From: Mytilus trossulus
Lineage: Eukaryota
Length of the DNA stretch: 64,000 nucleotides
Reading direction: 5' to 3'
NCBI RefSeq assembly: GCF_036588685.1
Contig: NC_086376.1
Span: 93,041,630-93,105,629 of the forward strand
The notes beneath the pieces were generated by a model, which made no database searches, was not told where the DNA came from, and saw nothing but the letters and a program-made list of their open reading frames with translations. Position 1 is the stretch's first letter, and each line of letters begins with the position of its first letter. Shown in pieces: positions 1-60,181 of this stretch. The position numbers and the translations under genes were made by a program.

Positions 1-1695
1 CAAGTGAGAAATAAACATAGACAGAGAGATACAAATTAATACACTAACCTTTCGCTTGAAACAGTTTTTCTATCTTTCATTACAGATACTGAGATAGTAT
101 AAAAGAATCTCACCTGCCGACTGTTTTCTTGACCGTGTCATGATGAAATTGTGAAAGTGTGTAAGGGATGTTTTGCAACTTCGATTAAAAGAACAAATTG
201 ATTATAAAAACCGCAAATACAATGTAACATTTGTTTTTACTGTAACTGCTTAAAACCAATTATATTTGTCATCAAACGCAGCTCCGCCTTTGACACCTTT
301 CTTTGAAATTATTTATAGAACTTTAATAAAGCGTAGACAGTCAGTTGATTAGTAATCACGTTGATTCTGTTAAACTGACTGTTTTATATACTCATGATAC
401 TTTGAATGTTAAAAAGATTGAATGGTCTTTTCTGATTCTTAAATATGTTGAAGTCAACCCATGCTTTGCAAATTTTAGGGGGGCGCCCGCCCGCCACGCC
501 CCCGCATAAATCCGCCCCTGATGGCTACCAAAATGTCGGTCTTCAGTTTTCTAATATCTCTTTTCATACCTGTAGGCTTAAAAAGGGAGTTCAATTTTTT
601 TTAAAAGATCAAAAGAACAAATTTCAGTGAAATTATTAGCCAAATTAGCCCTTAATGTGCTGAATTTGAGAACATTATGTAGTACCACCATGTCAGTGCA
701 ATAATATAATGCTTCCAGGAATATAAGTATTCAGATAAACTACTGCCTTCTGACATTTATAACTTTTCAATACACATTAGGAGATATACACTTCAGTAAA
801 TAGTACTCCAGATCTCTGGGGTTACACTTCAGTAAATAGTACTCCAGATCTCTGAGGTTTAGAGACCAATATATTTTTAACACTAAACAGAAAGGAGATA
901 ACACTTCAGTAAATAGTACTCCAGATCTCTGGGGTTAAGAGACCAATACATTCTAAACACTAAACAGAAAGAAAATATTCAAAATTCAAGAGCAGAAGGC
1001 TATATATCTTATGTGTTATCATCTGTAAAGGCAGCTTCAAAGTTGAGATGAAAGTAGAAGGTGTTTTTTTACCAAGGATAATTTGTGCATGTTGAGAGTT
1101 ATGTAACATCTAATGTAAGGGTAATGTTAGAAATCTAAAGAATCCAGTAGTTATGTAAAAGATATTAGTGAATAGTATTTTCTACATATGTTCTCAATGA
1201 AATCAATTGACATGGTAGAATCCCTAAAAATTTTCAAGCTATCTGAATTTCACTAGACAAAATTAAGTTAACATTCCTGTAAAGTATATACCAGTGGCAG
1301 ATCCAGAGTGTTGTAGAGGGCGACTAGGAATACAACTCTTTGATAGCTAAAAAATTGTTTCTCACTATTTCATAAATTTTTATGCATTACATAGTCCAAC
1401 AATGTACTACAGGTGGGTAATTAATTATAAATTACCTTTCCCTTTCAAAACTCCTCTATGGGGATCTCATTAGGGTGTCTGATCCCATTTCCCACTTATT
1501 GTTTTGCCAGAATCCTGTATTCTGGTTATGGTTGCATAAAGTAATTTCCAGTGTCCTGTCGACTTCATTTCCTGTTTTCAAGCTTAATTATTTGACTTTC
1601 ATGTATCACGCTTAAAAAATCAGCCAACCCCATGTCACACTTAGACCCCAATGAGCCCACCTCTATCAACCCCTGCATTATGCCTGCATACATAC

Positions 1696-4600
1696 CATTT
1701 GTGGATAAATATGTATCTGTTTCTTTAGTGACAATGAGATCAACAAAGTCTCTTGGTGAGATTAGTCCCATACAGGCACTGGATGTACAAGCTCTATTTA
1801 ATCTTAAATCCTACAAATAAAATAAAATATATTTTAAGTTTTAAATAATCTATAATATCAATTAGATATCAGAAGATGTGTTATGAGTGCCAATGAGACA
1901 ACCTTTTCATCCAAGTCACAATTTGTAAAAGTAAACCATTATAGGTCAAAGTAAGGTCTTCAACACAGAGCTTCCAGGCTAAACCTGCTAAATATTGAAA
2001 CTGAGACTTTTCATTTTCAGAATCATGCGCTTTCAAACTTTGTCTTCTTCTATTTTTGGTGAGAAGTAGCAGCAATACAAAAATACTTAAGGGAGCAACC
2101 ATTTAACTTCAAGTGGGGGGGCTATGTATTTTTTCAGAGTCAGAACAATTAAATTTAGTTTTTTTAGATGTTTTTAATCAATTTTTTTATTTTTAAATAA
2201 AACACTATCTGGATTGAGAAGATATTTTTTTGTCATCTGCTTGACCAGAATCCCCCCTTTTTGAAGTTAAATGGTCATTCCCTAAAGATTTATAGGAAGC
2301 CACCATTCCATATGAGCTGGGTAAGCACTTCAAGCTACCTATTTGTCAGATCTAGGATGTTTAAGATCTGACACAGTGTATATATATTACACCTGTCTAT
2401 TGCTACACACTGTACAATGTCCTGGATATATTTTGATTCATTTTGTCATTGGGTAACTGTCTCTTTAACATACAACCTACATTTCCTTTTATTCATACTT
2501 TTATCTTATACAATGATGACTAGCAATATGAATGAATTGGCAAACAATTTGTAATTAAAAACAGGAACATCTCTCTTATAGCACCAGATATTTCATACCT
2601 CTTTAATACACTGAGTTTTGTCATACCTCTTTAATACACTGAGTTTATTTGCTCAAAACAATTTGTCAATCTGTTGTAGTACATATATATTGAATAAAGG
2701 AAGTAAACTACTTTTAAAATAAATCATCCCAGATAAAAACAAAGATGAAAGTTAAATAATCTGTAGTGAGTTTATCATATGCAGGTGAGGGTCTCTGAAA
2801 AGTTTGAGACAAAAAAAAATATTTACCAGCTGATTGAAAATTTTCTATCTGCAGTCAATTTACTGTTCGCACAAAACAGGTGAAAATATTATGTTCATGC
2901 ATATGTAATTACATTTGCAATTGGTTTACACTGTTTATAAAATACTTACATCTCATTAATTTTGACTTTTGCCTACAGGAACTTGTTAAAGGTAAGACAA
3001 ACAAAATATGATGGATGCATATGGAAAAGAACAGTGCAAGGCATGTACTTAAATATTGAGTGGATTGGATTGGAGTGGAGTGGAGTTGTCAAGTGGAATG
3101 GAGTGGTGGAGTGAAATGAAGTAGAATGGAGAAGACTATAGTGGTGGAGTGTGTGGTTGCATTGGTGTTTTATAATAACAAAATTGGAAAGATGTTAAGC
3201 AATTGCAAGTCTCGTAATACATAGCATCATTAGATCATTCTTTTGTAATATAATTATGATAAAATACTAATAGTAAAAAGTATGTATACAAAGTCTTCCA
3301 AATAAGATTTTTTGCTATAATTCAGATTGATGCTGGGAAGTGTGAAATGTTAAGTGTCACTTTTATACAAAGTTTTTTACACAGCTGGATGTCATTGAAA
3401 CCAAACATTCAGATTCTTTCTACAATTTTAACTTTCCTAACTCCATGGTTTTACTCTATGATTGCACTTCACCACTCTATTCAACCTTTTAGTACATGCC
3501 TATAAATTAATATGCTGAAGAAGACTGGCATGACAGGCAGAGAGCTCCAGGTTATTTTGAAGAATTTTTGTGAAATACTTATGAATATAAACAATATATG
3601 TAAAGATGTTTAAAGGTTACTCAGGGTAGATTACCAGACTAAATTGCAATATAAACCTTTGCATTTTTTATGTCTAAAAACACTGAATACATAAATATTT
3701 TGATTAAAAACAAGAAGCAACCTCTATTTAACTGTGATGAATGTGAGAGAATGCCAATAAAAGCTGACCCCTTGTGGTTTTTTGGTTGATTTTAATCAAT
3801 TTACAGCCTAGATGAAATACCTACATGCTTGTGTAATTAGATTGATATTATACATAAAAAAATCTCTCTCAATAATTGTAAGTGCCCCTACCTTCTTCCT
3901 AGACATTATATATACATTATTTCTACCTCCCATAGCTAATGATCAAATAATGCACTTAAGGCAGGATCTATCAAAATGAAAATATTTAAAATGGGGAGTT
4001 TTTTTAAAAGCATAAAACTGATATTAAAAAGAAAGATCATACAGACAACAAAATCATTTTTTTAGCTTCTTATTAAAGCTTTATCAAAATCATGAGATGA
4101 TGAAAGATTGAAACTAAAGTTGCTTAGATGCACAAGATACCAAATGATAAGGATAAACAACAGCAGGTCACCTGACACCCTTTAACAATGAGCAAAACCC
4201 TTACCATAAAGTAAGCTATAAAAGGCCCAGCTTTCTTCATTTCAATTTCAGACTATGCAATACAATGATATAAGGAATAAAACCATTAATCCATAGCCCC
4301 ATAGCTTTTAAAGTTAAATTCAACAATTTCAAGCATTCAAAGCTATTTTGTCTCAGGTTCAAATAAAGTGTCAGTCATTCCATGTCAAAACTATACCTTT
4401 GTCCAGTCCTGATTATGACTATATGTGCTGAAAAAATCAATGGCATATTATAGCACACTCAGGTTCCTCAAAGTTTGGTACAGCAAAAACAGGTACTTCA
4501 GGTCTAAGCTCTCCTTTTTTAATTTCAAATCATTCTTTTTACTTTTTCAACAAAAAGAAAAAAAAAGAAAAAAAACAGAAAAAAAACAGAAAAAAAGGGG

Positions 4601-44041: not shown

Positions 44042-44108
44042 ATGGCGGATGTTTTGGATCTTCAAGAAGGGACCGGCGAAGAGTTCGAAGTTGACGAAGA
44101 AGGAGACC
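44042..44108 (+). CDS. RBM8A: RNA-binding protein 8A (Y14, exon junction complex), exon 1 only
   Basis: MADVLDLQEGTGEEFEVDEEGD followed by a phase-1 GTAAGA donor; matches the conserved Y14 N-terminus (MADVLDLHE.....F..DE.GD). No intact downstream exon was found in the window. Confidence 0.85.
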
Positions 44109-44243
44109 GTAAGATACTTGTATTTAAAGTAGCAGAGTCTCACAACGAACAGCAAGCTATTAAGGGCAACAAAAGCACTAGTGGAAAGCAATTCATACAG
44201 GAAAACCAATGGTCTAATCTATAAATAAAAACAAAAACACATA

Positions 44244-44827
44244 TAGTCGCCGTCACGTAAAATTGGCACGATGATTTTTGTCAAAATTTTCTTAAATATC
44301 AATCGCATTTACTCGAGATCATGTTTTTCAATTTGCGGAATAAAAATCCAATCCAAATATATACTACTGCCCTACCTTTTATTGTGTTTTCACTGTATAA
44401 TCCTGACCTTCACATTTTTCAAGATTGTTTTCATTGTAAAACCGCCATCTTGGTTTCTATGAGGATCCCTTACTACATAACATTCGTTACTCTCTGGTAA
44501 TATCATTGTCATTGATGATACGATTTCCCGCGCTTTTTACATAAAGATGACGCACAGCTCCGAGAGACACAAGAACATTGAGAGCACGTGGACTCCACGG
44601 CAACACTTCCGGTAATAACAATGTCGGATTCCACCATACAAAATAATCCTGGATTTTGTGAAGGTCAGGATTATACAGTGCAAACATAATAAAAGGTAGG
44701 ACAGTAGTATATATTTGGATTGGATTTTTATTCCGCTATTTGAAAAACATGATCTCGAGTAAACGCGGTCGATATTTAAGAAAATTTTGACAAAAATCAT
44801 GGTGCCAATTTTACGTGACGGCGACTA
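44244..44827 (-). mobile_element. MITE (584 bp, TA TSD, ~170-bp TIRs) related to the adjacent Sailor-type transposon
   Basis: TA|TAGTCGCCGTCACGTAAAATTGGCAC ... GTGCCAATTTTACGTGACGGCGACTA|TA, with long imperfect TIRs. Shares subterminal motifs with 45034-55788 in the opposite orientation. Confidence 0.9.
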
Positions 44828-45414
44828 TAATGCAACATACATGTACAATTCCAATTCACCCCTCAGGTTAATATCAAATTGGGTTTTTCACCACCAAGCT
44901 CCTTAATGTATTGGGTTTTTTCATCGACACAATATTGAATATTTAGGCAAAATCAACCCCAATTTTGTTCAATCTAAAATTAATATGTTTCTGTCTTCGT
45001 TTAGCTCTTTTATTTGGTTTAGGGTTATGGTTACAGTCGATTTCAGGTTATTCTGGTTGGGCTAAAACGCTTCGTACGTAAAACTGACTTACCGCGTCTA
45101 TTCAAAATTATGTTTTCCTAACGCATAATTTTTGGTATTGCCTTAATCCAATAATTATTTCCCCCTTGTTCCTCACATATCTGGTACCGTTTGCAAAATT
45201 GCTTCCGATAGGTTATCTCACCATTGGAAGTCGGCCATTGTTTTTACCGGAAGTGTTGCCTGGGAGTACGATGACGTATGTAAATATTATCTTTTCGAAA
45301 TTCTCGGGAGTCGTCTCGGTTAAGACGATAAAAGAAAGACGTTTATAAATAGCAGACGAACTTCTGTTTACCATATCGACTTATATTGAAGACTTGAAGA
45401 TTTGTTTATATACA

Positions 45415-48400
45415 ATGGGAAGGAAGAAAGTCAGAACGACAATCAAGAGTGTTGAGGTATAACAACTTGTGTATAAACCAAGAATGATGTTTTCTGAAAC
45501 TCAGGTGAATCACTGACAGTGCCTTTGGGGAATATCATCTGTTTTCAGTTGTCAACTTGTGTTATTGAAAACTTTATAAAGTTGTCCCTTTTAATGTATC
45601 AAAGTAAGAAATACTGTAGTGATTACCCATACAATTCAGAAAACACCATTCACAGCTTTTCCCTTCATATATAAAACTTTTCTTCCCTGTCTACTGCAGT
45701 TTTGAACATGCAAGAAAAAAAACATGACTCTTTGCAAATGATTCAAGACATTAAAGAATACAGAATAATGGGAAAAATATAGAAATAATATAGAAAAAAA
45801 TACCCAACACAGGGGCAGATCCAGCCTTTCAAAGGGAAATTCCAACCTAGGAGAAAGGGGTTGACGCTCTACCCATTTCTCCTGGGTTCTAAGGGGTGGG
45901 ATTTCCAAATGTATGACCCCATTCTGACCCCCAATGCCACCACTAACGAATACAACAAAATAAAGAATAGAGAATTCTATCTATTCATTGGCTGATCCAG
46001 GGTTGAGGAGGGTTGGTTTCCCTTTTTTGGGGGCAATCAATGCATTCATATGGGGACCTATAGTCAAGACATACATCCCTTTTTGGGGGGCAATCAATGC
46101 ATTCATATGGGGACCTATAGTCAAGACATACATCCCTTTTTTGGGGGCAATCAATGCATTCGTATGGGGACCTATAGTCAAGACATACATCCCTTTTTTA
46201 AATGGCTGTTCTGCCCCTGATATTTTTACACCAAGAAATGAAAATTGGACACAACATTCATCAATCATACTTTATCACTAGACTAGTATATATTTGTTAA
46301 GGGGCCAGCTGAAGGACGCCTCCAGGTGTGGGAATTTCTCAGTACATTGTATACCTGTAGGTGACCTTCTGCTGTTGTTTTTCTAGTATGGTCAGGTTGT
46401 TGTCTCTTTGATACATTCTCCATTTCCATTCTCAATTTTATTTCACAATCAATTGCATAAAGTTCTAATCACTGATAGATCCTACATCTTATCTAAATTA
46501 TTGAAATCATCATTTTGCTTTTGCACTTTGAGTAAATTAGATGCACCAATTATCACCTCTACAACATACTTCAATAGAGATAACAGGAAGTTTGAAAAAT
46601 ACCAAATAAACTAAACCAACAACACTGCATGGTCCATTTTTCCTGAGAAATAAATAGTGCATGATTTGGCCTAAAATTTTATACAAGACTGCCAGATACC
46701 TGTAAGTGCAATAATATGGGTAAAAGAAATTGAGAATATTGTTCGCACAGAGACATGCCTTTATTTTACAATAAAATAACATATATTAGAACCTATTCAT
46801 TTATGAGTTGGACATAAGTTGCAAAAATTTTCTGCCCAACTTTTCATCCTTGATAGTAAAGTCTTTGACCATTATTTAACTTAGAGCAGAAGTCCATAAC
46901 AAGTACAATATGTGGCACTCTGACACTTTTTATCCTTAGGAAAATTGTTTTATTGCTTGTTCTTCTAGTAATTTTAATTATAATTATAGTTTTTATTAAA
47001 ATGAGCATATTTTGAAAGTTTCATCTATTTTTCCATAAAAAAAAAAGGTATGGGCATTATAAGCTAGGAATAATAATAACATGATGTCCTTTTATAGAAA
47101 ATAAGTCTGGAGACCTACATTAAAAAAAAAACCACAAATCTGAAAATATATAAACAACATTTGAATTTATCTTATATAATACAAGGCATGGACATTTTTA
47201 CCTAGGTTAATAAACTACAAGGAAATTATTAGGAAAAATAGGGGGATATGAATTCCATTAGTATTTATAATGCACAACTCTAATTATAAAACATAGTATT
47301 GAATATTCATTGTGTACATGTAAATATTTTTTTTTCAAAATTAAAGGACATGAATGCTTGAAGAATATAAATGACATTGACAAAAGTTTCTAGGAAAATT
47401 GGCCAAGGGACATCCATTTCAAGAAAATTATAAATCCACAACTCTATTGAATATCAAAACATAACATTAAAATTTCAATTGTGTATATGTACTACATGAT
47501 TTAAATCGTTATTATTTTTTTCCTATACAAAAAAGGGACATGTATGCTTTCACCTAGAAATATTAATGATGGACTTTAATTCATAGAAAAATGAGTGAGG
47601 GAAAAGAAATAACTTACATCAGACTAAAAATACAAGTTAATTTTGTAACAATGGATTTTTAAGGCCAGAAATATGTGGCAACCTAGGTTTCATTTTTAGA
47701 AATAATAACTCACACTCTCATAAAATTCATAAACAGTTACCCAAGGGTGTCTTGACAAAATATTCTATCCATTGAGCACACCCAATTAAATTTTTATACA
47801 CAGAATTCATTCCAGGAATTGTATACTAAGGGAGGTAATCCCTATAAGAAATAGATTTATCTCCCATTAATTTGTCAAATTGTTGGTTACAATATTGACA
47901 TTTTTCAATGCTAAATTTTCTAATGCATGCAACAATTATAAAAAGCATCCCCAGAATAATAACAAACAAATAAATCTATGCTACAAAATTGATTAAAAAC
48001 TGTTATGAATTAATTGAATACTAGAATTATAATGGAATGGAAAATTATGTCGGATTACATGCATTGTCACAACGTCAGCTCTGACGACATCAAGAGGAAA
48101 AACAACATTTATAATATTAAGATAAATACAAAATAAAGAGTATATCCACATCAAATACTAGGTAGTTTAAAATGTTATTAAGCCAGCAATCTGACAACAA
48201 GGATGAACAATTTAGAAATTATGATCTGCTTAAAATAAATTGTTAATAATAATTTAGAAATCAAAAACTGTACACTTACAGTTAAAACATTTTCATATAA
48301 TTTATATTGAAAAACACTTAATTTAGAAAGCTATATATTATAATAAAAGAAATTGTGTAAATTAAAAATTATATTTGCCATTGATTTTTGCAGGTTTCAC

Positions 48401-51277
48401 ACCTCCTTGAAAAATTCTTAAAATTTTTCACCATGGAAAAGAAAATTGGAAAACCATGGTGTTTAAGTGATCCTTGGTCACGCATGGTGAAGGCAACAGG
48501 TAGTGTAAATATTTATGGTTAAGACACTGGCAAATATGAATTCTTGACTTACATTAAAACGGCTTGTCTGAAAATTTTACTTAAAAGTCACTGACTGTTC
48601 TTTATGAGTTATAGTTATAAAACTGGACATCCCCCTATTCTTAATTTATAATTCCCATATCTCAGAACAGTTTAAAGATCTTGAATTTTTAAATTAAAAA
48701 AAAAGAGCCTGTTTCAATTTATAGAGACAATTTTCAAAAGTTTTATGAAAGTAAGGTTTGAAACTATCTCAGGAAACGTCAAAAAACAGAAAAACATTTT
48801 AGTCATTACATTCAATCAAAATTATTTACACATGCATAGCTTCAAAATCAAAAAAGTTCAATAAAACAATATGCATAAACTATTGAAAAATAATGGTCCA
48901 TCTTCTTTACTAAGGAAACCGACAGCTTCACACAAACCAGTACTTTACAAAATAAAAATGTACTAGAAAATGTGTTCTTTAAATACAATTATAAAATCTC
49001 CTGAAAAGATTAATACTCTCAATATCTCGTAATTGGTTGATTATTAAAGTGTTCACATTTAACACAGAACAAATGAATGTTAATATTTCTGAATAATTTT
49101 TCTCTATTTTCAGGTATAAGCCTCAGTACATTAAAGAGGAAGATCGAGGCTTTGGATCCAGTGCAGGATGTTGTAAAGGCAGTCCACAAGTCATCAATAC
49201 AGAAGCCTGGTCCAAAGCCTTGGATCTTGGACGACTTTAACCGGAACGTTGTCAAAAGGACCATCCATGATATGTACCGGAAGAAACAGGTGGTGTCCAT
49301 GCCCCGTCTTCATGAAGTCCTGAAAGAGAAAGACATTACTGCATCATTGTCAACAGTAGTGAGAACAGTGAAGTCACTGGGTTTTCGGTAAATATTTATC
49401 AAAATTAACATTTTTAAGTAGGTAGGGAATTTATTTCCTTTCTGATTGACAAGCAAAATAACATGCTTGTTGAACACAAGAAAATGAAGTTACATTTAGG
49501 GGCCTTTTATAGCTGACTATGAGTATGAGCTTTTCTCATTGTTGAAGGCTGTAAACTGACATTTAGTTGTTAAAGTCAGTGTCATTCTAGTCAGTTGTGG
49601 AGAGTTGTTTCATTGTCAATCAGACCAATTCTTTTTTATATTTACTGCACACACAAAAAAAAACAAGAAATCTTATTTCATTTTAAAATTAATTTATATT
49701 TTTGGGACAACAAAAAGAAATTCATATATGTAAATATGGTAAATATATGGTCTAACAGCCCATACCTGATTCAAAACACAAGACATCTGCACACCATTGA
49801 TTAACATTTTTGTCAAACACTGTTATCATCAACCAAATGTAGAATCTGTAATTAGAAGTATTATAAGAAGTCAGTATGTAGGAAACAGTGTATTTGAAAA
49901 TTACATTTTTTTTGCAGTGAAAATTAGTTATAGAGAAAAAATCATTCCTATTATTTCTTTATTCTGAGGACAATGCAATAAATGCCAATGATTAAACTAG
50001 TATGTCTTTTTTTCAGGTTTTCCAAGAAAGGATCGGGCCGACGTCATGTCGTTGAGAGGGATGATGTTGTCGCTCTTCGTCACCATTATCTGCGTCAGAT
50101 ACGTAAGTACAGGCAGCAAGAGCGTCATATTGTGTATTTAGATGAGACTTGGTTGAATTCCAATCATGTAGTCAAAGGTGATTGGCTGGATGAACCTAGC
50201 ACATCCATGTCAGTCTTTGAGCCACACTGTGAGGGCAGCGGGCGTTCTTTACCATCTGGTAAAGGCACTCGTTTGATAATCCTAGATGCTGGATCTTCTC
50301 AAGAAGGCCTCATCCCTGGTGTTGGCCTAATCTTTGAGTCGAAAACCAGCAGCTCGGATTATCATGATGAAATGAATAGTGAACACTTCACAGAATGGTT
50401 CAGAGACACGCTCATCCCTAGACTAACTCCCCAGTCTGTAGTTGTAATGGACAATGCTCCATATCACAGCCACTTAGATCCTGAGTCGAGGGCACCTTCT
50501 ACAGGTGCTAATAAACCAGGTATCTCGGCATGGTTGGATAAGAACAATGTTGATTATGACCCCAAAATGAAAAAGACTGGGCTGCTTGATTTGGTAAATC
50601 AGCACAAGCCTCAGAAAAAATATGTGATAGACGAACTTGCAAAAGCTCATGGCCATGTGGTTTTACGATTACCCCCTTACCATTGTGAGCTCAATCCCAT
50701 TGAAATGGTTTGGTCTGACTTGAAAGGCTTCGTAGCTAGAAAAAATTCTACCTACAAAATTAAAGATTGTAAGAAGCTTTTTGAGGAGGCCAAGTCCCAT
50801 TTCAGTGCGGAGCGCTGGGCTAAATTTGAGACTCATGTGGTGAGGGAGTATGAAGAAAAGCTCTGGCAGATCGATGGTCTCAGAGACAAGGCTCTTTCTC
50901 CAGTTATTATACACATGACGGACGATGAGACGGATGACAGTCAGGCGACTATTGTATATTGTCAGGAGGGGGGTACCGATGACGAGGAAATTGACATGGA
51001 CATTGTTGACGGTTATGTCTCTGATACCAGCGATCAGGCTGATGTGATTTTGTGTAAAATTTGTCATGACACTGATCCGCCAGGACGTGTTCCCAAGCGA
51101 GACCGGGGAACACACATTGATTGGTTTCAGTGTGACACCTGTGATCAGTGGCTGCATAACAAATGTTGCACAAAACCTGCCCTGGCGCAGATAATGTGTC
51201 CTCGGTGCTATTCTCTTCTTCACCACCGAAAGCTCAGTGAAACACTGGTCTCACCACTGGATGATATGGAGCAATAA
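45415..51277 (+). CDS. Intron-containing DD83E transposase with C-terminal PHD finger, predicted 560 aa
   Basis: Exons 45415-45456, 48394-48499, 49114-49387 and 50017-51277 (1683 nt, phases 0/1/2 compatible). HTH-like 'RMVKATGISLSTLKR' and 'SLSTVVRTVKSLGFRF'. Catalytic YLDETW (D at 50141), VMDNAPYH (D at 50450) and LNPIEMVW (E at 50702), with 83 aa between D2 and E. C4HC3 PHD at 51053-51208. Exons 1-2 are less certain than exons 3-4. Confidence 0.88.
46020..46199. repeat. 3 x 57-bp tandem repeat inside a small GC-ended MITE in transposase intron 1
   Basis: GGGGGCAATCAATGCATTCATATGGGGACCTATAGTCAAGACATACATCCCTTTTT x3. Confidence 0.85.
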
Positions 51278-52053
51278 TGTCTTTCTTTAATGTTGGTCAA
51301 ATGCAGTGCATTTTTCCATCAGTTTCAGGACTTCTGAAGAATGGACAATGTTATATCTGTGATAAAAGCATATCTGTGATAAAGACTATATTGTGATAAA
51401 AGTAAAGCATATCTGTGTTAAATTATATAGTGCTAAACATCTGTGATTTGTTGTGTTTTAATGTGCAATATCATGATTGTAAATATTATCGTCATTCGTG
51501 TAAAGAATTTATCATGTAAAAAATTATCTCGAAATTCTTGGACTGTTGTTGACATTAATTATATATGCATATTATTTATTGTTACACGTTGATTAAGTTT
51601 AATTTGAATTTATCAAATTTTATCAATTTCAAATAGTTAAATGTATTGCAAGTTATTTTATATCAAAATGTTTCAATATAACTTATCAAAATCTCATGTG
51701 TATTTAATTATTTTAAACAGACTTTATATTTGTAATATGTACAAATAAATGGTTGTATGAATCTCAATTTGAAATGGAGATTAGAGACATATGAACACAA
51801 ACTATTTTAGTTTTCACTTCATATGCAGAGAAATTACATTATTAAGCAGTGTAAAATATCTACACTTTATGGATTATTTAGATTAAACAGAGACAAAAAT
51901 TGTTCTCATTCCATATAATTAGTTCACTACTGACAAAGAAGTACAAAATGTAGGAGGGGACGTTTAGGTTGCACTCTGTTTATCTGTTTGTCAATCTTTC
52001 AGTCCAACAAATCAGTTTTCAACATTTTGTATGCCCCATATATGGTGATCTAT

Positions 52054-52719
52054 GGTAGCAATACACAGTTAGGAAAAAAACTTAAAATTGACACTCATAA
52101 TTTTTAAACACCCCCTTTCCCCTCCTGTCTAACAAAGAAGGCTTTATATGTGTGTTATGCATGTATATACTTGTAGAAAGATAATCTTCCATAGATTTGA
52201 TTTCTAATGGTCATAAGGGTGAAATATAATCCCTTTTGGGTGTAACCATGGCAACAATCTGCATTTCTTAGATACAAAATATAGCAAAAAAGGGGGGTGA
52301 ACATGTCACAAAAAGTCTCCAAAATTTGGTCTAAAGGAAAATTTCAATGAATTACAGTGATACCTTTCCTGAATCCATAGGTTTATATCTATCAAGTGGT
52401 CCAAAAAAAATCATATGTCTTCCTGCTCGTTTTTCCATAAAATTGAATTGAAAAGATCGAGCGCAAAATCTTTGTTGATAAACACTACAATAATTTATGG
52501 ACCTATGAACGGTACGGATAGGAAAATACGGACTGTCAATCATTGAAATGGCCTATAAAACATGTTAAAATCAATCTAAATGTTCATATAAACCCACTAA
52601 GAAGGCTATATTATTCTTCAATTACCTAAAAATCAATTTTATTGTACAAAAACTTTCATATTTAAAAAATTCACAGGGGCCATAATGCGAAACTAAACTT
52701 CTGACTGTGTATTGCTACC
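52054..52719. mobile_element. TIR element with 3-bp (TAT) TSD, nested in a HINE-like remnant inside the Sailor element
   Basis: TAT|GGTAGCAATACACAGT ... ACTGTGTATTGCTACC|TAT. Confidence 0.75.
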
Positions 52720-53224
52720 TATGGTCATTATGTTTTTAGTCTGTGCATTTGTTTGTCTGTCTGGCTTTATATTGAAGCTTTGGTCAAGGTAGTTTACAAC
52801 ACTTCTTTCTGCATGTTTGACGTTATTGTTTCAAGAACTTGGTATATATAGTTTTATCACGACAAGTTAAGAAGCATGCTTGAATTTTATTATGGTCTCA
52901 CTCTGACGAGTTGTGGTTCTTGGACTAAGAAAATCCCCTTAAAAAATCATCAGGCTTGAATATTGGCTTCATGTTTCTGTGTTTGTTTATACATTGCACT
53001 AGCTATTAATATATATATAGTACATATAGAAATTTCCATCATGACAAGTCTGAATTTTGGTTCCAATACAACAAGTTTATATCCAGTGGGATATGAGTGG
53101 GGGACTATTAAATGTATGTGTGTTGCCATGAAATATGCACATTATAGATATTATCATGTACATGTAGAAAGATGTGAGTGCCAATGAGACCTCTCTCCAT
53201 CTGAACCTCTGATTGCTTGTTAAT

Positions 53225-53640
53225 AGATATAGGAAGATGTGGTGTGAGTGCCAATGAGACAACTCTCCATCCAAATAACAATTTAAAAAGTAAACCATTA
53301 TAGGTTAAAGTAAGGTCTTCAACACGGAGCCTTGTTTCACACCGAACAACAAACTATAAAGGGCCCCAAAATTACTAGTGTAAAACCATTCAAACAGGAA
53401 AACCAACTGTCTAATCTATATAAACAAAACGAGAAACATGAATATATTACATAAACAAAAGACGACTACTGTACATCAAATTCCTGACTTAGGACAGGTG
53501 CAAACATTAGCAGCAGGATTAAACGTTTTAATGGATCCAAACCTTCTACCTTTTTCTGAAACAATAGCATAAAATCACAACATAGAAAAACACACGATAA
53601 AATATCAATTGGCAGACTTAACTTTTAATCAAAAAAAAAT
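53225..53640 (+). repeat. Abundant interspersed repeat with head AAGATGTGGT(G/A)TGA(G/T)TGCCAATGAGACAACTCTCC
   Basis: The same head recurs at ~1871, 30400, 35006 and 53168, and reverse-complemented at ~32245 and ~49620. Confidence 0.75.
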
Positions 53641-56600
53641 ATGATTACAAAATAAACGAAATACGAATGTTAAATATTATTAAAAAAAATCTGAAGAAGA
53701 AAGTCAGACAAATAAAAACATTCATGAGCTCAAGTTTATACTTGGAAATCAGACTGACTATAACTGTGCTTGTTCCAAAATGGCATGAAAAGTGTTAATG
53801 TATGCACTAACATTATGGTACACTACGTGTGGTCAACTAAAAGATGCTTATTATTTTTTTTTAACTTGGCATAAAAAGGGGTTGACGTCATGAAACTTTG
53901 CTCAGTGCTCAGAGCACAAAAATCATGCTCGAAACATGAAATCCAGCATTTTGATTGGTCGATTCTGGAGTCTTGAGTACAAAAGTTGTGCTTGAATGTT
54001 TTATGACCGCAAGGCCCGAACACAAATTCATTTAAAAGAAAACAAACAATACATGTAATTTAAATTTTCACCGTTTGTACCTACATGTATATATGAGGAC
54101 AATTCTCAGTTGACATGGAAAAAAAATGAATAGGCTAGCATATTTTACCCTTAACGCTAATAGTTAACGAAATCTTTGAATCCACAAAGATGCTTTTTAT
54201 TTTTCAGAAAATGAAAATTTTATAACATTATGATTACAGCATGTACAGCCAGTACCAAAGCACAAGTATTTTTCCGGCGATTTTGCACTGGTAAACAAAA
54301 GTCTAATCCTCATGTCCATTCCTTTCACCATATGAACTAGTTGTTCACAACTTCCAAATAATAATGACATCTCTGATGTTTTTATTTCAATATTCTTGTT
54401 TCTGCATGTTCAAGGTGCTTTTATTTCCAAAAACAAAATAGTCATGTAGACATCATGTGCATTGTAACAAGACATAATTATGTAAATTTTAAATGTTCTT
54501 GGTAGAAAATTGAGGAAAGGTATATTGCTTATAAAACATACATGTAACTGTAGTATTATAAATAAAAGTTGTAATGAATTTTAAATGCTTCAAATTAGCA
54601 TGAGTATAAGCTTCGACGTAGTCTTCAACAATGAGAATAACATTCTTTAATTCATGACAACTTGATAAAATATTTACTTTCCCCAAGTAATCTGATTTAT
54701 CCCCTTAGGCAACAACCATTTGATTTTTTGTTTTTGAGAGGGGGGAGGCCATCATATGGATTTTTTTTTTCAATTTTTGGAAAAAAAATAATTTGTTTTT
54801 GACACTGAAAAAAGAAATATGATTTCTTTTCACTCTCAGCTGCCACTACAGTAATGTTATGATAAATTTATAAGAACTTGTCGCCAATAAAATAGATTGG
54901 CGAAAAAAAAAGTTTGAGCGGGGGGGAAAAAAGCCAAAGCCTCCACCCAAGAAATCAAATGGTTGCTGCCTTATCTAATACAAAATGTTCCATTGAAAAT
55001 GTTGAAGGAAATTGCATAGTAAACAAATGTGTTTGATTGCTGCACACGTGAAGTGAGTGATACGCGACACATAATCATTAACCCAACATCAAGGACAAGG
55101 ATCAGGAACATCGAATGATCAACAGATTAGCGATCATCAAAGGCATGAATAAGGCCACACAAACATGTTATTTACAGAAAAAGGTTGCATATCATTATGA
55201 GAATTATGGATTTTCTTAACTACTGTACACAAACCTTCCATTCATCATGTTCATCGTAGATGTTGAAACCGTGACGGTGAAAACACGTGTATGAAATTGA
55301 TTCCGTTCCATTCATTGTATCATATTAAGAGCATACATTATAATTGCTAATCTTGGCATTGGATATGTTGTCAATAATATCATTCTGTACAATATGTAGC
55401 GTAAAAATACCGGGTACAAGATCATATTTTCATAGAATTAATCCTCAATTCCATGTTTTCTACTGTCTCATCTTGTTTACATCATTAGCGCGCGAAAAAT
55501 AACGAAACATTAGCCGAACGTTTCCGGAAACTCCGGAATTTCCCGAAGATTGATAAACAACAAACGATCCTCATAGAAACAAAGATGGCGACCAATCAAT
55601 GCAAACTTGTCGTAGGGAAAGTCAAGGTCGGAATTTCAACCGTCCAATACACAAGGGCTGCCGTAAAACATTTGGAAATGTCAACACCAAAAATTATGCG
55701 TTAGGAAAACATAATTTTGAATAAACGCGGTAAGTCATTTTTACGTACGAAGCGTTTTAGCCCAACCAGAATAACCTGAAATCGACTGTAGGGTTATTTG
55801 CTAGCTGTTTTATTTGGTTTATTCACTGAGGTTTAATTTGTGTCCCGTTTCAAACCTTTTGCCAGTTTTGTATTTTCTCACAAAAAAAGGATATGTGTAT
55901 TCACAGGCACTCGTTTACCTTTATATAATGAATTCTGAGACCAGTGCCTGATCAGTGGCTGTGTGCATGGTGTGTGTATTCATTAATTAACCTTAAAATG
56001 AATAAAAAAATAGCATATAAACTCTAATTATACTTGAATGATTTTCTTTTATTCAATTTACATAAATCTGGGTTTAGTTGTCTTTTATTAGAACTTTTGG
56101 TTTCTGATGCTTTATCATTTCATAATTGATTTGGCCTTTCACTTTTTCCAACTGAATTTGGGTTTGATGAAACCCCGTGTTTATTAGCAATGTTCTCGTT
56201 CGATGGACGCTTCCTAAAAACACTGGCTGAGTCTTGTTATCATTATAACTTTCCCTCAGTTTTCTATTTTTAGAAAGACAGGAAATTTTCAATTATAAAT
56301 ATTATAAAAATAGTTAACGTGACGACTGTAAACAGATAAGGGCAAATAATATAAACAGTAGCCAATAAAAGGGTTGAGAACTCATGGTTTTGGCATATAA
56401 TTGTGTTTTCCGTTGAATTAATTGGGTTGTTGAACACTTCAATGGACAATTTCATTGGGTTTTCTTTTATTTGCATTGCGTGATCACGCAAATACGCAGC
56501 TTATCTGGAGCTCTGAATTCTATGGCCTTTTTCTTCTGGCCCTCATACTTTTCATGTATTGAATCCATATTTTGAATGTAACGGTTTATTTGTGGTACAT

Positions 56601-58065: not shown

Positions 58066-59008
58066 ATTTATGCGCCTGTCCCAAGTCAGGAACCTCTGTT
58101 CTTTGTTAGTCTTGTATACTTTTTTCAATTTAATCTCATTTATATGTTTTGGAGTTTAGTATGAGGCACATTTTCACTGAACAATTTTAATCCCTGGGTG
58201 TGGTATTTTTCGTTGCGTTGAAGACCCATTGGTGGCCTTCGTATGTTGTCTGCTCTTTGGTAGGGTTGTTTCCTCTTTGATATATTCCCCGTTTTCATTC
58301 TCAATTTTATTACTTATGTTGAGCTCTACCTAATGTCCACATCACGTAAAAGCAGTTAGACTTCTAACAGGAGTTATCGACCTTATATGACGAATTTTAT
58401 CACTTGCATGTTCCAGCCTGTTATATTGAAATATATGGCAAATAGATAAAACTTTCAATTGCAAAAATTACCAGCAAGACAAGATCTATTGATTTTCATA
58501 GTTCTTTATTTCACCCCTGAATTTCCTTCTATATAAAAGTTCTTTCCGTTCCGTTTTCCATTTCCGCTGTTTAGCAACACCCAGTAAAAATAGCAAACAG
58601 AAAGTAGAAAAAAATGTTTTGACTTCAGGATTGCATAACTTTTTATTCTTCGAGGCAAGACCCACTTTTTTCGATTAAAACACAATTTCACATTAGTACA
58701 TGTACATAATATAAACATGAATTTTTTTTTCTATGTAGCATTTTTTAAAGATCAGCTGTTTTGCATGTAAGCCTATGGAGCAGTCAATTACAAGACTGCA
58801 ACCTTCAACATGTTCTGCTTATTTAATTTTACGTGCATCGTGATTTTCAAATGCTAATATTTTGCGTGTTCTGTATTTTTTAAAATAAATTATAAACACT
58901 GGGCAGAATCTGACATCAAGAAAAAAATTGATTGAAATTTGGAACAATGGAAGAAGAATATGACTATATTATATGAAGACCTCAACTGCAGAAAAGCAGG
59001 TCCCCAGA

Positions 59009-59915
59009 GATGTTGGCCAGATTGGACTGGGAGGAGATGTCATGGAGAGGATGCGTCCAGCAGTTGTAAAACTTGATGACAAGATTTTACAAGTGTGTGC
59101 AGGGGGTATGCACACAGTGTGCTTAACCAATAAGGGAGAGATAATTACATTTGGATGCAATGATGAATCAGCCCTTGGCAGAGAAACTTCATAAGAAGGA
59201 TCAGAGATGTACCCAGCTAAATTAAACCTGCCTTACAAAGTTATACAAGTTAGTGGTGGAGACAGTCATACAGCTGTATTAACTGAAGATGGCCATGTGT
59301 ATGCTTGGGGTAACTTTCGTGATGCAAATGGATCAATGGGCTTAACCTCTGGTGGCATAAGTAAAGACTCCCTTGAGATGTGCCCAGGGGAGACTGTTGT
59401 TAATATAGTCTCTGGAGGAGATCATTTAGTATGCTTAACAAACAAAGGGGAAATATTTACAGGAGGCTGTGCAGAATAAGGCCTGTTAGGAAGAGTAGCA
59501 GAGTGCTTTGCTGGTCGAGGCAGTAGGAGAGGAGAAGATTCTATATTAAAAATGGGGCCTGTAAGGTGCAGAAAACACAGTAGTAGAAAGCATGCCACAT
59601 TTTCAGACATCTGGGCAGGACAGTACGTTACTTTTGCCAAAGAAAAAGAATCCGGTGATATTTATTCTTGGGGACTAAATAACTACTTTCTGATAGGCTT
59701 TCATGATATGCAGAACAGATTTATTCCAAAGTGGATTCCATCATTTGCAGCTCTTAATAAACAATGGACTAAGATTCAAGCAGGCCAGCACCATACAATG
59801 TTGTTAGATGAGGATGGAAAAGTGTATACCATAGGAAGACCGGAGTATGGCAGGTTAGGACTTGGTGAGAAAAGTGGAGAAATGAAAGATCCTACACTAG
59901 TAACAAAATTAAGTG
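59009..59915 (+). pseudogene. RCC1: Intronless, doubly truncated RCC1 (regulator of chromosome condensation) pseudogene fragment
   Basis: Three ORFs in one frame joined across TAA stops at 59192-94 and 59477-79: DVGQIGLG...[11 protein letters not shown]...[12 protein letters not shown]...VSGGDSHTAVL...WGNFRDANG...SGGDHLVCL...GCAE*GLLGRV...RGSRRG...WGLNNY...AGQHHT...GRPEYGRLGLG. The N-terminus and last blades are missing. Confidence 0.9.
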
Positions 59916-60181
59916 AAAACATGTATGACCTAGTTTATCGGAAAATATACGCCGGGAAATACGAATGAATTAAGGTTATTATTAAAAGAATATTGCAAAT
60001 AATCGTGGCACAACACTGCTCCTCTTAAAGAAAAAAGAATTCTGTCCCTAGAATTGACATAAAATGAATAAATATTCAAATTTAAACATAAGAAGCAAAC
60101 ATACAATGTATATAAACAGTAAAACAACAATATATATAAATCTCATTCATTTAAAGTTCAATATGATTACAAAGTTCTTTC

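What the first reader, a model, noticed from the sequence alone, without database searches (positions are those of the whole stretch)
45034..55788. Giant, intron-containing Sailor-type (DD83E) transposon whose transposase carries an acidic linker and PHD finger: candidate chromatin-guided transposition system
Seen: matched TIRs with TA TSD 10.75 kb apart, a spliceable uninterrupted 560-aa ORF, a DD83E triad, then a D/E-rich linker (MTDDETDDSQ...GGTDDEEIDMD) and a complete C4HC3 PHD (CKIC...DWFQCDTCDQWLHNKC...CPRC). Known: Sailor is the ITm group with ~82-residue D-E spacing, and typical ITm elements are only ~1.3-3 kb. The Trp in CxxC..W.H is the aromatic-cage residue of H3K4me3-reading PHDs (ING, BPTF). 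RAG2 also uses an acidic hinge plus PHD to direct a DDE recombinase to H3K4me3. Inference: the PHD may steer integration to active promoters. Consistent with this, the element and its related MITE sit 0.2-1 kb downstream of a bidirectional housekeeping promoter. I cannot confirm from here whether PHD-bearing Sailor elements are already described.
Basis: partly seen in the sequence, partly recalled or inferred. Interest (0 to 1): 0.85.

Follow-up and report, generated by a model that had tools for sequence, protein, structure and literature searches.

The report
Giant mussel Sailor transposon with PHD finger
This is a real, recently mobile 10.8-kb jumping gene of a mussel (Mytilus) whose spliced transposase ends in a zinc finger of the kind that reads the active-promoter histone mark H3K4me3; the finger is conserved across a mollusc-wide branch of the Sailor family, but whether it steers where the element lands could not be tested here.

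Summary
The element is bounded by 107-nt inverted repeats and TA duplications at 45034-55788. At least four full-length copies (9.0-10.8 kb) lie at unrelated sites, two of them 99.6-99.9% identical, so the giant unit itself transposes.

The transposase gene has three coding exons and two introns and encodes 533 aa, not 560 aa with three junctions. RNA-like contigs from two organisms show both GT..AG junctions. The catalytic triad is DD83E with the published Sailor motifs, and the core folds like Sleeping Beauty and Mos1.

A disordered acidic linker leads to a C4HC3 PHD finger. A profile of it hits H3K4me3-reader PHDs in the PDB (KDM5B PHD3, E 1e-7). Its two invariant Trp align with KDM5A W1625/W1635, the trimethyl-lysine cleft.

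All PHD-bearing relatives fall in one clade (SH-aLRT 98), and every named member is a mollusc. Other Sailors keep the acidic tail but lack the finger. Exons differ 0.5% between copies against 3.5% for non-coding DNA.

Targeting to promoters is untested. A CpG proxy on nine insertions was not significant (p 0.09-0.13), and the complex prediction gave no verdict.

Other agents of this scan noted PHD fingers in other mussel transposon superfamilies. Verdict: a new variant of a known kind.

The parts
45032..45033 (.). left TA target-site duplication
   Evidence: TA flanks both ends in all four full-length copies
45034..45140 (+). left terminal inverted repeat (107 nt, starts CAGTCG)
   Evidence: 98.2% identical between copies
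46019..46199 (.). 57-bp tandem repeat (3.2 copies) inside the 5' interior
46272..46443 (.). about 170-bp high-copy repeat nested in the 5' interior; present in copies C14 and C3, absent from most of C9
48433..48499 (+). transposase exon 1 (ATG, 22 codons plus 1 nt)
   Evidence: matches the P0001 N-terminus; joint 48499|49114 GT..AG in run X3
49114..49387 (+). transposase exon 2 (helix-turn-helix DNA-binding region)
   Evidence: joint 49387|50017 GT..AG in runs X3 and X9
50017..51277 (+). transposase exon 3: DDE core, acidic linker, PHD finger, stop codon
   Evidence: RNA-like contigs cover 50016-51383 without a break
50141..50704 (+). catalytic triad D (50141-50143), D (50450-50452), E (50702-50704): DD83E
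   Evidence: the core folds like Sleeping Beauty, Mos1 and SETMAR
50918..51052 (+). D/E-rich linker, predicted disordered
   Evidence: pLDDT 32-46 over residues 301-342
51053..51208 (+). C4HC3 PHD finger with two invariant Trp (Trp codons at 51122-51124 and 51149-51151)
52051..52720 (.). about 670-bp insertion private to this copy (a MITE-like repeat, 99-100% identical to many genomic copies)
55682..55788 (-). right terminal inverted repeat
55789..55790 (.). right TA target-site duplication
44242..44829 (.). neighbouring 588-bp MITE of a sister PHD-Sailor subfamily (its ends are 88% identical to the end of the C13 element)

Best explanation
An autonomous, recently active Sailor-type (IS630/Tc1/mariner, DD83E) cut-and-paste transposon of Mytilus, about 10.4-10.8 kb long.

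Its three-exon gene is transcribed and spliced into a 533-aa transposase. The parts are an N-terminal bipartite helix-turn-helix, an RNase-H-like DDE core with the long Sailor spacer, a disordered acidic linker and a C-terminal PHD finger.

The finger is of the H3K4me3-reader type, with a two-Trp cleft as in KDM5A/B PHD3. It was acquired once at the base of a clade whose named members are all molluscs, and it is kept under selection.

Most likely mechanism (inferred): the helix-turn-helix domain binds the 107-nt TIRs and the core excises and inserts at TA. The flexibly tethered PHD docks the transpososome on H3K4-methylated nucleosomes. This would bias integration, and perhaps activity, towards 5' regions of active genes.

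Shown: anatomy, mobility, splicing, selection, and the fold and sequence class of the finger. Inferred: histone binding and target bias.
For: Ends and mobility:
- TIRs and TA duplications.
- Four full-length copies with unrelated flanks; C14 and C3 are 99.6-99.9% identical over 10.4 kb.

Gene and expression:
- Three copies keep the open reading frame of exon 3.
- Both introns are removed at GT..AG in RNA-like contigs of two runs from two organisms, and exon 3 including the PHD is covered.

Catalytic core:
- DDE_3 at E 6.8e-17.
- Sailor motifs and DD83E.
- The core model has pLDDT above 90, with best fold hits Sleeping Beauty, SETMAR and Mos1 at E 6e-8 to 1e-4.

PHD finger:
- All eight zinc ligands and both Trp are invariant or nearly so across 21 sequences at 29-61% identity.
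- The profile hits KDM5B PHD3 (1.1e-7), Alfin-like, KDM5A PHD3 (3e-6), SET3, BPTF and PHF2. Most of these are deposited with H3K4me2/3 peptides (see the titles); that they are H3K4me3 readers is otherwise my recollection.
- W29 and W38 of the finger align with KDM5A W1625 and W1635, the K4me3 cleft (PMC9172573).
- The top Foldseek hits are all PHD fingers.

Selection and distribution:
- All 15 PHD-bearing proteins lie in one clade of 22 (SH-aLRT 98). The 62 other Sailors in the tree lack the finger.
- Exons differ 0.5% against 3.5% for non-coding DNA between copies (Fisher p 4e-13). There are 0 differences in the 237-nt PHD part between the three intact copies.

Context:
- This copy and a MITE of a sister subfamily both landed within 1 kb of a CpG-rich, promoter-like spot.
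Against: - There is no direct evidence of histone binding.
- Pfam's PHD model is below its cut-off on this sequence (18.4 against 24 bits).
- Foldseek E-values for the small domain are weak (0.035 or worse), and the domain model is only moderately confident (pLDDT 73.7).
- The residue before the first Cys, which is aromatic in BPTF, ING and RAG2, is aliphatic here.
- Flank CpG o/e of nine insertions (0.37-0.94) does not differ significantly from 20 random sites (median 0.67; p 0.09-0.13). Two of the nine lie in CpG-poor DNA.
- Synonymous sites are also unusually conserved (3 seen where roughly 11 would be expected). Part of the low exon divergence may therefore be gene conversion rather than selection.
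- A PHD-like finger at the C-terminus of piggyBac transposase binds transposon DNA, not histones (PMC5861402).
Confidence: 0.5

Rival explanations
1. The C-terminal finger is a DNA-binding or synapsis module, like the cross-brace cysteine-rich domain of piggyBac transposase. It would bind subterminal sequences of the element, or help to pair its two distant ends, and would not read chromatin.
For: - The piggyBac C-terminal domain is a PHD/RING-like cross-brace finger. It binds a specific motif in the transposon ends and is essential for transposition (PMC5861402).
- The 250-500 bp at both ends of this element are better conserved than the interior (98.4-98.8% against 94-97%).
- Very long elements may need extra end-recognition.
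Against: - The ligand order here is the canonical C4HC3, not piggyBac's C5HC2.
- No piggyBac domain appears among the sequence or fold hits. Nearly all of the hits are histone-tail readers.
- The two Trp of the K4me3 cleft are invariant, which a DNA binder has no reason to keep.
Confidence: 0.15
2. The finger reads the H3 tail but works as a switch or shield rather than as a target selector. It could activate cleavage only when the donor element lies in active chromatin, as H3K4me3 binding by RAG2 stimulates RAG1. Alternatively it could keep the element's own chromatin open against silencing.
For: - The same sequence evidence for a reader-type PHD applies.
- The element's ends are CpG-rich (o/e 0.71 and 1.08) while its interior is CpG-depleted (0.06-0.10). 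This suggests that the ends stay unmethylated.
- Several unrelated mussel transposon superfamilies also carry PHD fingers, as expected for a general host-chromatin interface.
- The RAG2 precedent is from the literature (PMC5175335, listed, abstract only).
Against: Nothing here separates it from target steering. Both may hold at once.
Confidence: 0.2
3. The finger is a passenger: an exon captured from a host gene, with no role in transposition.
For: The family has few copies, and no function has been tested.
Against: - The finger is conserved with all ligands from Mytilus to Crassostrea, Solemya and Patella at 41-68% protein identity.
- No close host PHD was found: only 19 hits at E 0.001 or better among 1.84 billion representative proteins. 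The hits I read, four of them scanned with Pfam, were transposase fragments or other proteins that look transposon-related.
- There are no differences in the PHD part among the three intact copies.
Confidence: 0.05
4. It is a domesticated host gene, not a mobile element.
For: The reading frame is far better conserved than its surroundings, and it is expressed and spliced.
Against: Intact 107-nt TIRs, TA duplications, at least four copies at unrelated loci, and a pair of copies 99.6-99.9% identical.
Confidence: 0.03

Closest known systems
Sailor (DD82E) superfamily of IS630/Tc1/mariner transposons (Shi et al. 2021, PMC8533490)
   Same: - Long D-to-E spacer. DD83E is reported as frequent in Mollusca.
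- Signature motifs around all three catalytic residues.
- TIRs, TA-containing target, low copy number, acidic C-terminal tail.
   Different: - Published Sailors are 1.38-6.98 kb (molluscan ones 2.2-2.5 kb, transposase 338-432 aa). The paper mentions no introns in Sailor, no zinc finger and no PHD.
- This element is 10.4-10.8 kb and a sister subfamily is about 13.1 kb. It has two introns, a 533-aa protein and a C-terminal PHD.
- The duplication here reads TA, not the reported TATA.
KDM5A/KDM5B PHD3 and other H3K4me3-reader PHD fingers (Alfin-like, BPTF, PHF2, TAF3)
   Same: - C4HC3 ligand pattern.
- The core motif W-x-x-C-D-x-C-x-x-W-x-H-x-x-C.
- Both Trp of the KDM5A K4me3 cleft are present.
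- These are the best profile and fold hits.
   Different: - Only 25-31% identity.
- A long first loop with a conserved Pro-Pro.
- No aromatic residue before the first Cys.
- Fused to a transposase rather than to a chromatin enzyme.
- Binding is not tested.
RAG1-RAG2 / RAG-like transposons
   Same: A DDE recombinase coupled to an H3K4me3-reading PHD through an acidic region.
   Different: - In RAG the PHD sits on a separate subunit (RAG2) and the catalytic core is of Transib type, not IS630/Tc1/mariner type.
- Here a single polypeptide carries both.
- The acidic tail predates the PHD in Sailor evolution.
piggyBac transposase C-terminal cysteine-rich domain; Rehavkus (Mutator-related) transposases with a PHD finger
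   Same: A cross-brace or PHD finger at or near the C-terminus of a cut-and-paste transposase (PMC5861402, PMC6446971).
   Different: - They belong to different transposase superfamilies.
- The piggyBac finger is C5HC2 and binds DNA.
- No function is known for the Rehavkus PHD.
Chromoviruses (LTR retrotransposons with a chromodomain on the integrase)
   Same: Works alike in principle: a histone-mark reader fused to the C-terminus of a DDE integrase to bias integration. This comparison is from my own knowledge.
   Different: A retroelement rather than a DNA transposon, and a chromodomain that reads heterochromatin marks rather than a PHD of the H3K4me3 type.

Membership tests
Sailor (DD82E) superfamily, IS630/Tc1/mariner | DDE triad with 78-111 residues between the second D and the E | tested here: met
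   83 residues: D145 and E229 of the exon-3 product. The range comes from PMC8533490.
Sailor (DD82E) superfamily, IS630/Tc1/mariner | Consensus motifs I/VVYLDET, VIIMDNA and HCELNPIEL around the catalytic residues | tested here: met
   The element has IVYLDET, VVVMDNA and HCELNPIEM, compared with the consensus.
Sailor (DD82E) superfamily, IS630/Tc1/mariner | Placement inside the Sailor clade in a tree with named reference Sailor, Tc1/mariner, pogo and IS630 sequences | not tested
   My tree holds only database homologues without family names.
Sailor (DD82E) superfamily, IS630/Tc1/mariner | TATA (4-bp) target-site duplication, as reported for Sailor | tested here: inconclusive
   All four copies read TA-CAGTCG...CGACTG-TA, so the duplication is TA. 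The sister MITE reads TATA-GTCG...CGAC-TATA, which fits either TA or TATA.
Sailor (DD82E) superfamily, IS630/Tc1/mariner | RNase-H-like catalytic fold of Tc1/mariner transposases | tested here: met
   AlphaFold core pLDDT is above 90. The top PDB hits are Sleeping Beauty (6e-8), SETMAR and Mos1.
PHD finger (Pfam PF00628) | C4HC3 ligands with canonical spacing | tested here: met
   The pattern is C-x2-C-x22-C-x2-C-x4-H-x2-C-x10-C-x2-C. The ligands are invariant or at least 90% conserved in 21 sequences.
PHD finger (Pfam PF00628) | Score above Pfam's gathering threshold (24 bits) | tested here: not met
   This sequence scores 18.4 bits, E 0.0022, over the full-length profile. Aligned relatives of the same finger pass: P0133 26.5, P0134 30.7 and P0125 51.2 bits. 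The family profile hits solved PHD fingers at E 1e-7.
PHD finger (Pfam PF00628) | PHD fold | tested here: met
   All of the top 49 listed Foldseek PDB hits are PHD fingers, but the E-values are weak (0.035 or worse) and the model is moderate (pLDDT 73.7).
H3K4me3-reader subclass of PHD fingers | Aromatic cage or cleft residues at the positions that contact trimethyl-lysine | tested here: met
   W29 and W38 of window:51038-51274 align with KDM5A W1625 and W1635. Both are invariant in the clade. The third cage position, before the first Cys, is not aromatic.
H3K4me3-reader subclass of PHD fingers | Measured preference for H3K4me3 over unmodified H3 | not testable with these tools
   This needs peptide binding assays. 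The complex prediction with an H3 tail gave no verdict (see Tried and rejected).
piggyBac-type cysteine-rich DNA-binding domain | C5HC2 ligand order (C3H plus C4 cross-brace) | tested here: not met
   The ligand order here is C4HC3, against the description in PMC5861402. No piggyBac chain appears among the PDB hits.

The most novel reading that the evidence does not exclude
The mollusc PHD-Sailor clade is a natural, single-polypeptide, chromatin-guided cut-and-paste system. Its KDM5-like two-Trp PHD would tether a Tc1/mariner-type transposase to H3K4me3 nucleosomes, so that elements of 10-13 kb and their MITEs integrate next to active promoters. The same kind of finger has been taken up independently by Mutator-like, KDZ, pogo-like and LINE elements of marine invertebrates, which would make histone-mark reading a general transposon strategy in these genomes.
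Probability: 0.3. Interest if true: 0.8.

Novelty: new variant of a known kind. Interest (0 to 1): 0.55.

Why it matters
Tc1/mariner-type transposases, such as Sleeping Beauty, are generally regarded as inserting at TA sites with little regional preference and as losing efficiency with cargo size (my own knowledge). Engineers fuse targeting domains to them to gain control.

This is a natural relative that moves as a unit of 10 kb or more and carries a built-in histone-reader finger, kept for a long time across molluscs. If the finger reads H3K4me3 and biases integration, three things follow:
- It would be a DNA-transposon counterpart of chromodomain-bearing retroelements, and a one-protein analogue of RAG1/RAG2.
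- It would help to explain how such elements persist in gene-rich regions of bivalve genomes.
- It could serve as a template for large-cargo, promoter-directed vectors.

The abundant sister MITE makes the targeting question directly testable with existing genome annotation.

Tried and rejected
- **Complex prediction.** I submitted the PHD (79 aa) with two Zn and residues 2-40 of the genome's own histone H3. The result was no verdict (score 0.21, mark 0.34), so it counts neither for nor against binding.
- **CpG proxy for promoter preference.** I compared CpG o/e of the flanks of 9 insertions or TIR remnants with 20 random 2-kb sites. The flanks of the four full copies gave 0.80-0.94 against a random median of 0.67. 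Mann-Whitney p was 0.09 for the four and 0.13 for all nine. This is underpowered and not significant. My first makeshift background was biased, and I replaced it.
- **Word-based search with the PHD region alone** found only the three closest proteins and was not informative.
- **A second gene in the 7.7 kb of non-transposase interior.** No ORF exceeds 100 aa and no block of raised conservation exists outside the exons and the ends. I rejected a second gene.
- **'Interior full of private secondary insertions'.** Rejected as the cause of the size. The interior is shared by all copies, and only one 670-bp insertion is private to this copy.
- **Further RBM8A/Y14 exons.** A motif search in six frames of the window found none.
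- **TIRs of subfamilies C5b and C13.** These were not resolved.
- **Joined three-exon protein.** The exons were searched by reference one at a time.

Full report
**1. What is there**

The window comes from a 1.3-Gb Mytilus assembly (G000 contig C4).
- The repeat finder gives inverted arms at 45032-45140 and 55682-55790, 109 nt at 97%.
- Reading the ends shows TA + CAGTCG... on the left and ...CGACTG + TA on the right.
- The element proper is therefore 45034-55788, with 107-nt TIRs that diverge abruptly after position 107.

**2. It is a mobile family, and it moves as a giant unit**

A search of the whole genome with the TIR found 14 matches. Three more TIR pairs are spaced 9.0-10.6 kb apart, on C14, C3 and C9.
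- BLAST and a MAFFT alignment show the four copies are collinear over their whole length.
- Each has TA on both sides and the flanks are unrelated, at 40-54% identity, which is noise.
- C14 and C3 are 99.6-99.9% identical, so a 10.4-kb unit transposed very recently.
- The window copy differs from them by about 3.5% in non-coding DNA.
- The window copy carries one private insertion of about 670 bp at 52051-52720. This insertion is 99-100% identical to a repeat that often stands in arrays elsewhere.
- Apart from that and a shared 170-bp high-copy repeat at about 46272-46443, the interior is family-specific.
- So the size is not due to junk that accumulated in this one copy.
- C9 has deletions and a broken frame. 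C12 and C10 hold truncated copies. C1, C5, C7 and C310 hold lone TIRs.

**3. The gene**

By reading the sequence, the coding exons are 48433-48499, 49114-49387 and 50017-51277, with GT..AG introns in phases 1 and 2.
- The product is 533 aa. That is the length of the annotated M. edulis protein P0001, which is 98% identical over exon 3 and matches the N-terminus.
- Contigs of four public runs that the tool guesses to be RNA were laid on 48300-51400.
- Runs X3 and X9, from two different organisms and studies, contain joints that skip exactly 48500-49113 (X3) and 49388-50016 (X3 and X9), with GT..AG ends.
- Contigs of 1.4 kb run from the exon 2/3 junction through the stop codon, so they include the PHD.
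- Caveats: 'RNA' is the tool's guess, and contigs do not give expression levels.
- Runs X1 and X2 hold an unspliced form that carries a 446-bp deletion.

**4. The transposase core**

- Pfam DDE_3 scores E 6.8e-17.
- The invariant residues in the alignments give D42, D145 and E229 of the exon-3 product, which is DD83E.
- The motifs IVYLDET, VVVMDNA and HCELNPIEM are those given as Sailor signatures by Shi et al. (PMC8533490). That paper also notes that DD83E is frequent in molluscs.
- An AlphaFold model built with 84 homologues has pLDDT above 90 for residues about 10-290.
- Its best PDB matches are the catalytic domains of Sleeping Beauty (E 6e-8), SETMAR and Mos1.
- Formal placement against named reference families was not done.

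**5. The linker and the finger**

Residues 301-342 are D/E-rich and predicted disordered (pLDDT 32-46). Insect, tick and sponge Sailors also end in an acidic tail. The tail is therefore ancestral, and the finger was added behind it.

The finger at 51053-51208 has the canonical C4HC3 spacing.

Evidence that it is a PHD finger:
- On its own it scores 18.4 bits in Pfam PHD, below the 24-bit cut-off, but over the full length of the model.
- A full scan of 1.84 billion representative proteins with the 79-aa tail found only 19 hits at E 0.001 or better.
- Those hits are transposase fragments, a SWIM+PHD protein, a protein with two such fingers, and a protein whose sequence looks retroelement-like to me (Pfam found only the PHD in it).
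- No close host PHD turned up.
- Several of these relatives pass Pfam's threshold, at 26.5-51.2 bits.

Evidence for the H3K4me3-reader subclass:
- In the 21-sequence alignment, C6, C9, W29, C32, W38, H40 and C54 are invariant. C35, C43 and C57 are at least 90% conserved.
- The profile of that alignment hits solved PHD fingers: KDM5B PHD3 (1.1e-7), Alfin-like 3, KDM5A PHD3 (3e-6), SET3, ceKDM7A, BPTF, PHF2, PHF23, CFP1, Spp1 and TAF3.
- Most of these I know as H3K4me3 readers, and many are deposited with K4me2/3 peptides (titles).
- In the HMMER alignments the two invariant Trp fall on the Trp of VDW and of EWFH in KDM5A. These are W1625 and W1635, which form the trimethyl-lysine cleft (PMC9172573).
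- The AlphaFold model of the domain (pLDDT 73.7; core 84-92) retrieves only PHD fingers with Foldseek, though at weak E-values typical of such small domains.
- No piggyBac cysteine-rich domain appears. That domain has a different ligand order, C5HC2, and binds DNA.

**6. Distribution and selection**

A maximum-likelihood tree used 300 core columns, with the tail excluded.
- It puts all 15 sequences with a complete finger into one clade of 22 (SH-aLRT 98). None of the other 62 sequences has the finger.
- Of the seven clade members without a complete finger, two that I inspected are truncated or frameshifted predictions (P0011, P0017). One is identical in the core to a finger-bearing one (P0007 = P0006). 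The other four (P0013, P0021, P0030, P0031) I did not inspect.
- A profile search shows a score gap between this clade and the rest.
- Every named member is a mollusc: Mytilus edulis, M. coruscus, M. californianus, M. galloprovincialis, Crassostrea, Saccostrea, Solemya and Patella.
- Between the window copy and C14 or C3, the exons differ at 0.5% of sites against 3.5% for non-coding DNA (Fisher p 4e-13 and 4e-14).
- The 237-nt PHD part has no difference at all among the three intact copies, whereas the dead C9 copy accumulates replacements.
- Synonymous changes are also fewer than the non-coding rate predicts (3 seen, roughly 11 expected). Gene conversion or a lower local mutation rate may contribute, and I leave this open.

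**7. Relatives in the same genome are giant too**

- The 588-bp MITE next door (44242-44829) has TIRs of about 190 nt and at least 40 copies at 96-99% identity.
- Its ends are 88% identical to the end of a degenerate PHD-Sailor on C13. They are 72-75% identical to the ends of the 68%-identity subfamily.
- For the C11 member of that subfamily, the two ends lie 13,062 bp apart around an intact exon 3.
- Large size is therefore a trait of the clade in Mytilus.
- The published range for Sailor is 1.38-6.98 kb, and 2.2-2.5 kb for molluscan members. That paper mentions neither introns in Sailor nor any zinc finger.

**8. Does it target promoters?**

- This copy and the sister MITE lie 1 kb and 0.2 kb downstream of an ATG exon (44042-44108). 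I recognise that exon, from memory only, as the N-terminus of RBM8A/Y14.
- The surrounding 1-kb bin has the highest CpG o/e of the window (1.14), set within a CpG-rich block at 41-45 kb and 55-58 kb.
- No further Y14 exons were found. RCC1-like exons start at about 58.97 kb.
- As a crude proxy for unmethylated, promoter-like DNA, I compared CpG o/e in the 2 kb flanking nine insertions with 20 random 2-kb sites.
- The four full copies score 0.80-0.94 against a random median of 0.67, and two remnants score 0.37-0.38. The p values are 0.09 and 0.13.
- The question is open. The family has too few copies, and the flanks of the abundant MITE could not be fetched.

**9. Mechanism and rivals**

The best-supported reading is a Sailor transposase that carries a flexibly linked H3K4me3-type reader.
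- I put about 0.55-0.6 on histone-tail reading of some kind.
- I put about 0.3-0.35 on a real bias of integration towards active 5' regions.
- The rivals are a piggyBac-like role in binding the element's ends, a RAG2-like switch or anti-silencing role, a passenger domain, and domestication. The last two are poorly supported (see the rival entries).

**10. Comparison and novelty**

PHD or PHD-like fingers are known in Rehavkus and Mutator-like transposases (PMC6446971), in piggyBac and in RAG2.
- Other agents of this scan noted PHD fingers in Mutator-type and KDZ elements of this same genome.
- I found no paper describing a PHD on a Sailor or any Tc1/mariner-type transposase.
- The proteins exist in databases only as unnamed 'Tc1-like transposase DDE domain-containing' products.
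- I therefore file it as a new variant of a known kind: Sailor, but giant, intron-bearing and fused to a reader-type PHD.

**11. Limits**

- The complex prediction gave no verdict.

Noticed in passing
window 44242-44829: A 588-bp MITE with TIRs of about 190 nt. It has at least 40 genomic copies at 96-99% identity (503 first-look candidates), so it was active recently. Its ends match a sister PHD-Sailor subfamily (88% to the C13 element), not the giant element. It is the best material for an insertion-preference test.
   Followed up: partly
L022:2725 to L023:5789 (G000:C11:33634809-33647873): A sister PHD-Sailor subfamily (68% protein identity, intact exon 3). Its MITE-like ends lie 13,062 bp apart, so it is even larger than the window's element. 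The right end lacks a clean TA.
   Followed up: partly
window 52051-52720: An insertion of about 670 bp private to this copy, with inverted termini (GGTAGCAATACACAGT...). It is 99-100% identical to many copies that often stand in arrays with a period of about 1.4 kb on C9, C6, C4 and C12. It is a very young repeat family.
   Followed up: no
window 50017-51277 compared with copies C14 and C3: Synonymous sites of exon 3 are also far less diverged than introns and interior (3 synonymous and 2 replacement changes, where about 11 synonymous would be expected at the non-coding rate). Possible causes are gene conversion between copies, or a lower mutation rate in the unmethylated, GC-richer exon.
   Followed up: partly
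window 45001-56000: CpG o/e is high at both ends of the element (0.71 and 1.08) and very low in the 5' interior at 46-48 kb (0.06-0.10). It looks as if the ends stay unmethylated while the interior has long been methylated in the germline.
   Followed up: no
window 49444-49651 (intron 2): A short repeat present at depths of 500-4000 in the RNA-like contig sets of all four runs. It is a highly transcribed or very abundant SINE/MITE-like sequence nested in the transposase intron.
   Followed up: no
window 49319-49764: Runs X1 and X2 (organism A) hold contigs that are collinear with the unspliced gene but skip 446 nt with CT..AC ends. This is a deletion variant of the element rather than an intron.
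   Followed up: no
window 44042-44108 and 58973-59968: An ATG exon resembling the RBM8A/Y14 N-terminus (from memory) has no further Y14 exons detectable in the window. RCC1-like repeat exons lie on the same strand from about 58.97 kb. The gene structure around the insertion is unresolved.
   Followed up: partly
P0125, P0127, P0131, P0133: The same PHD subtype (C-x2-C...PP...W-x-Q-C-D-x-C-x-x-W-x-H) occurs in other proteins that look mobile-element-related to me. They are a SWIM+PHD protein (Pfam), a protein with two fingers, and one with four tandem copies upstream of a stretch I read as endonuclease-like. This hints that the module is shared among marine-invertebrate transposons.
   Followed up: partly
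window 45000-45031 and 55791-55830: The insertion site lies inside a short duplicated motif (...agct-c/g-ttttatttggttta...) present on both sides of the element. The target was a small local repeat.
   Followed up: no
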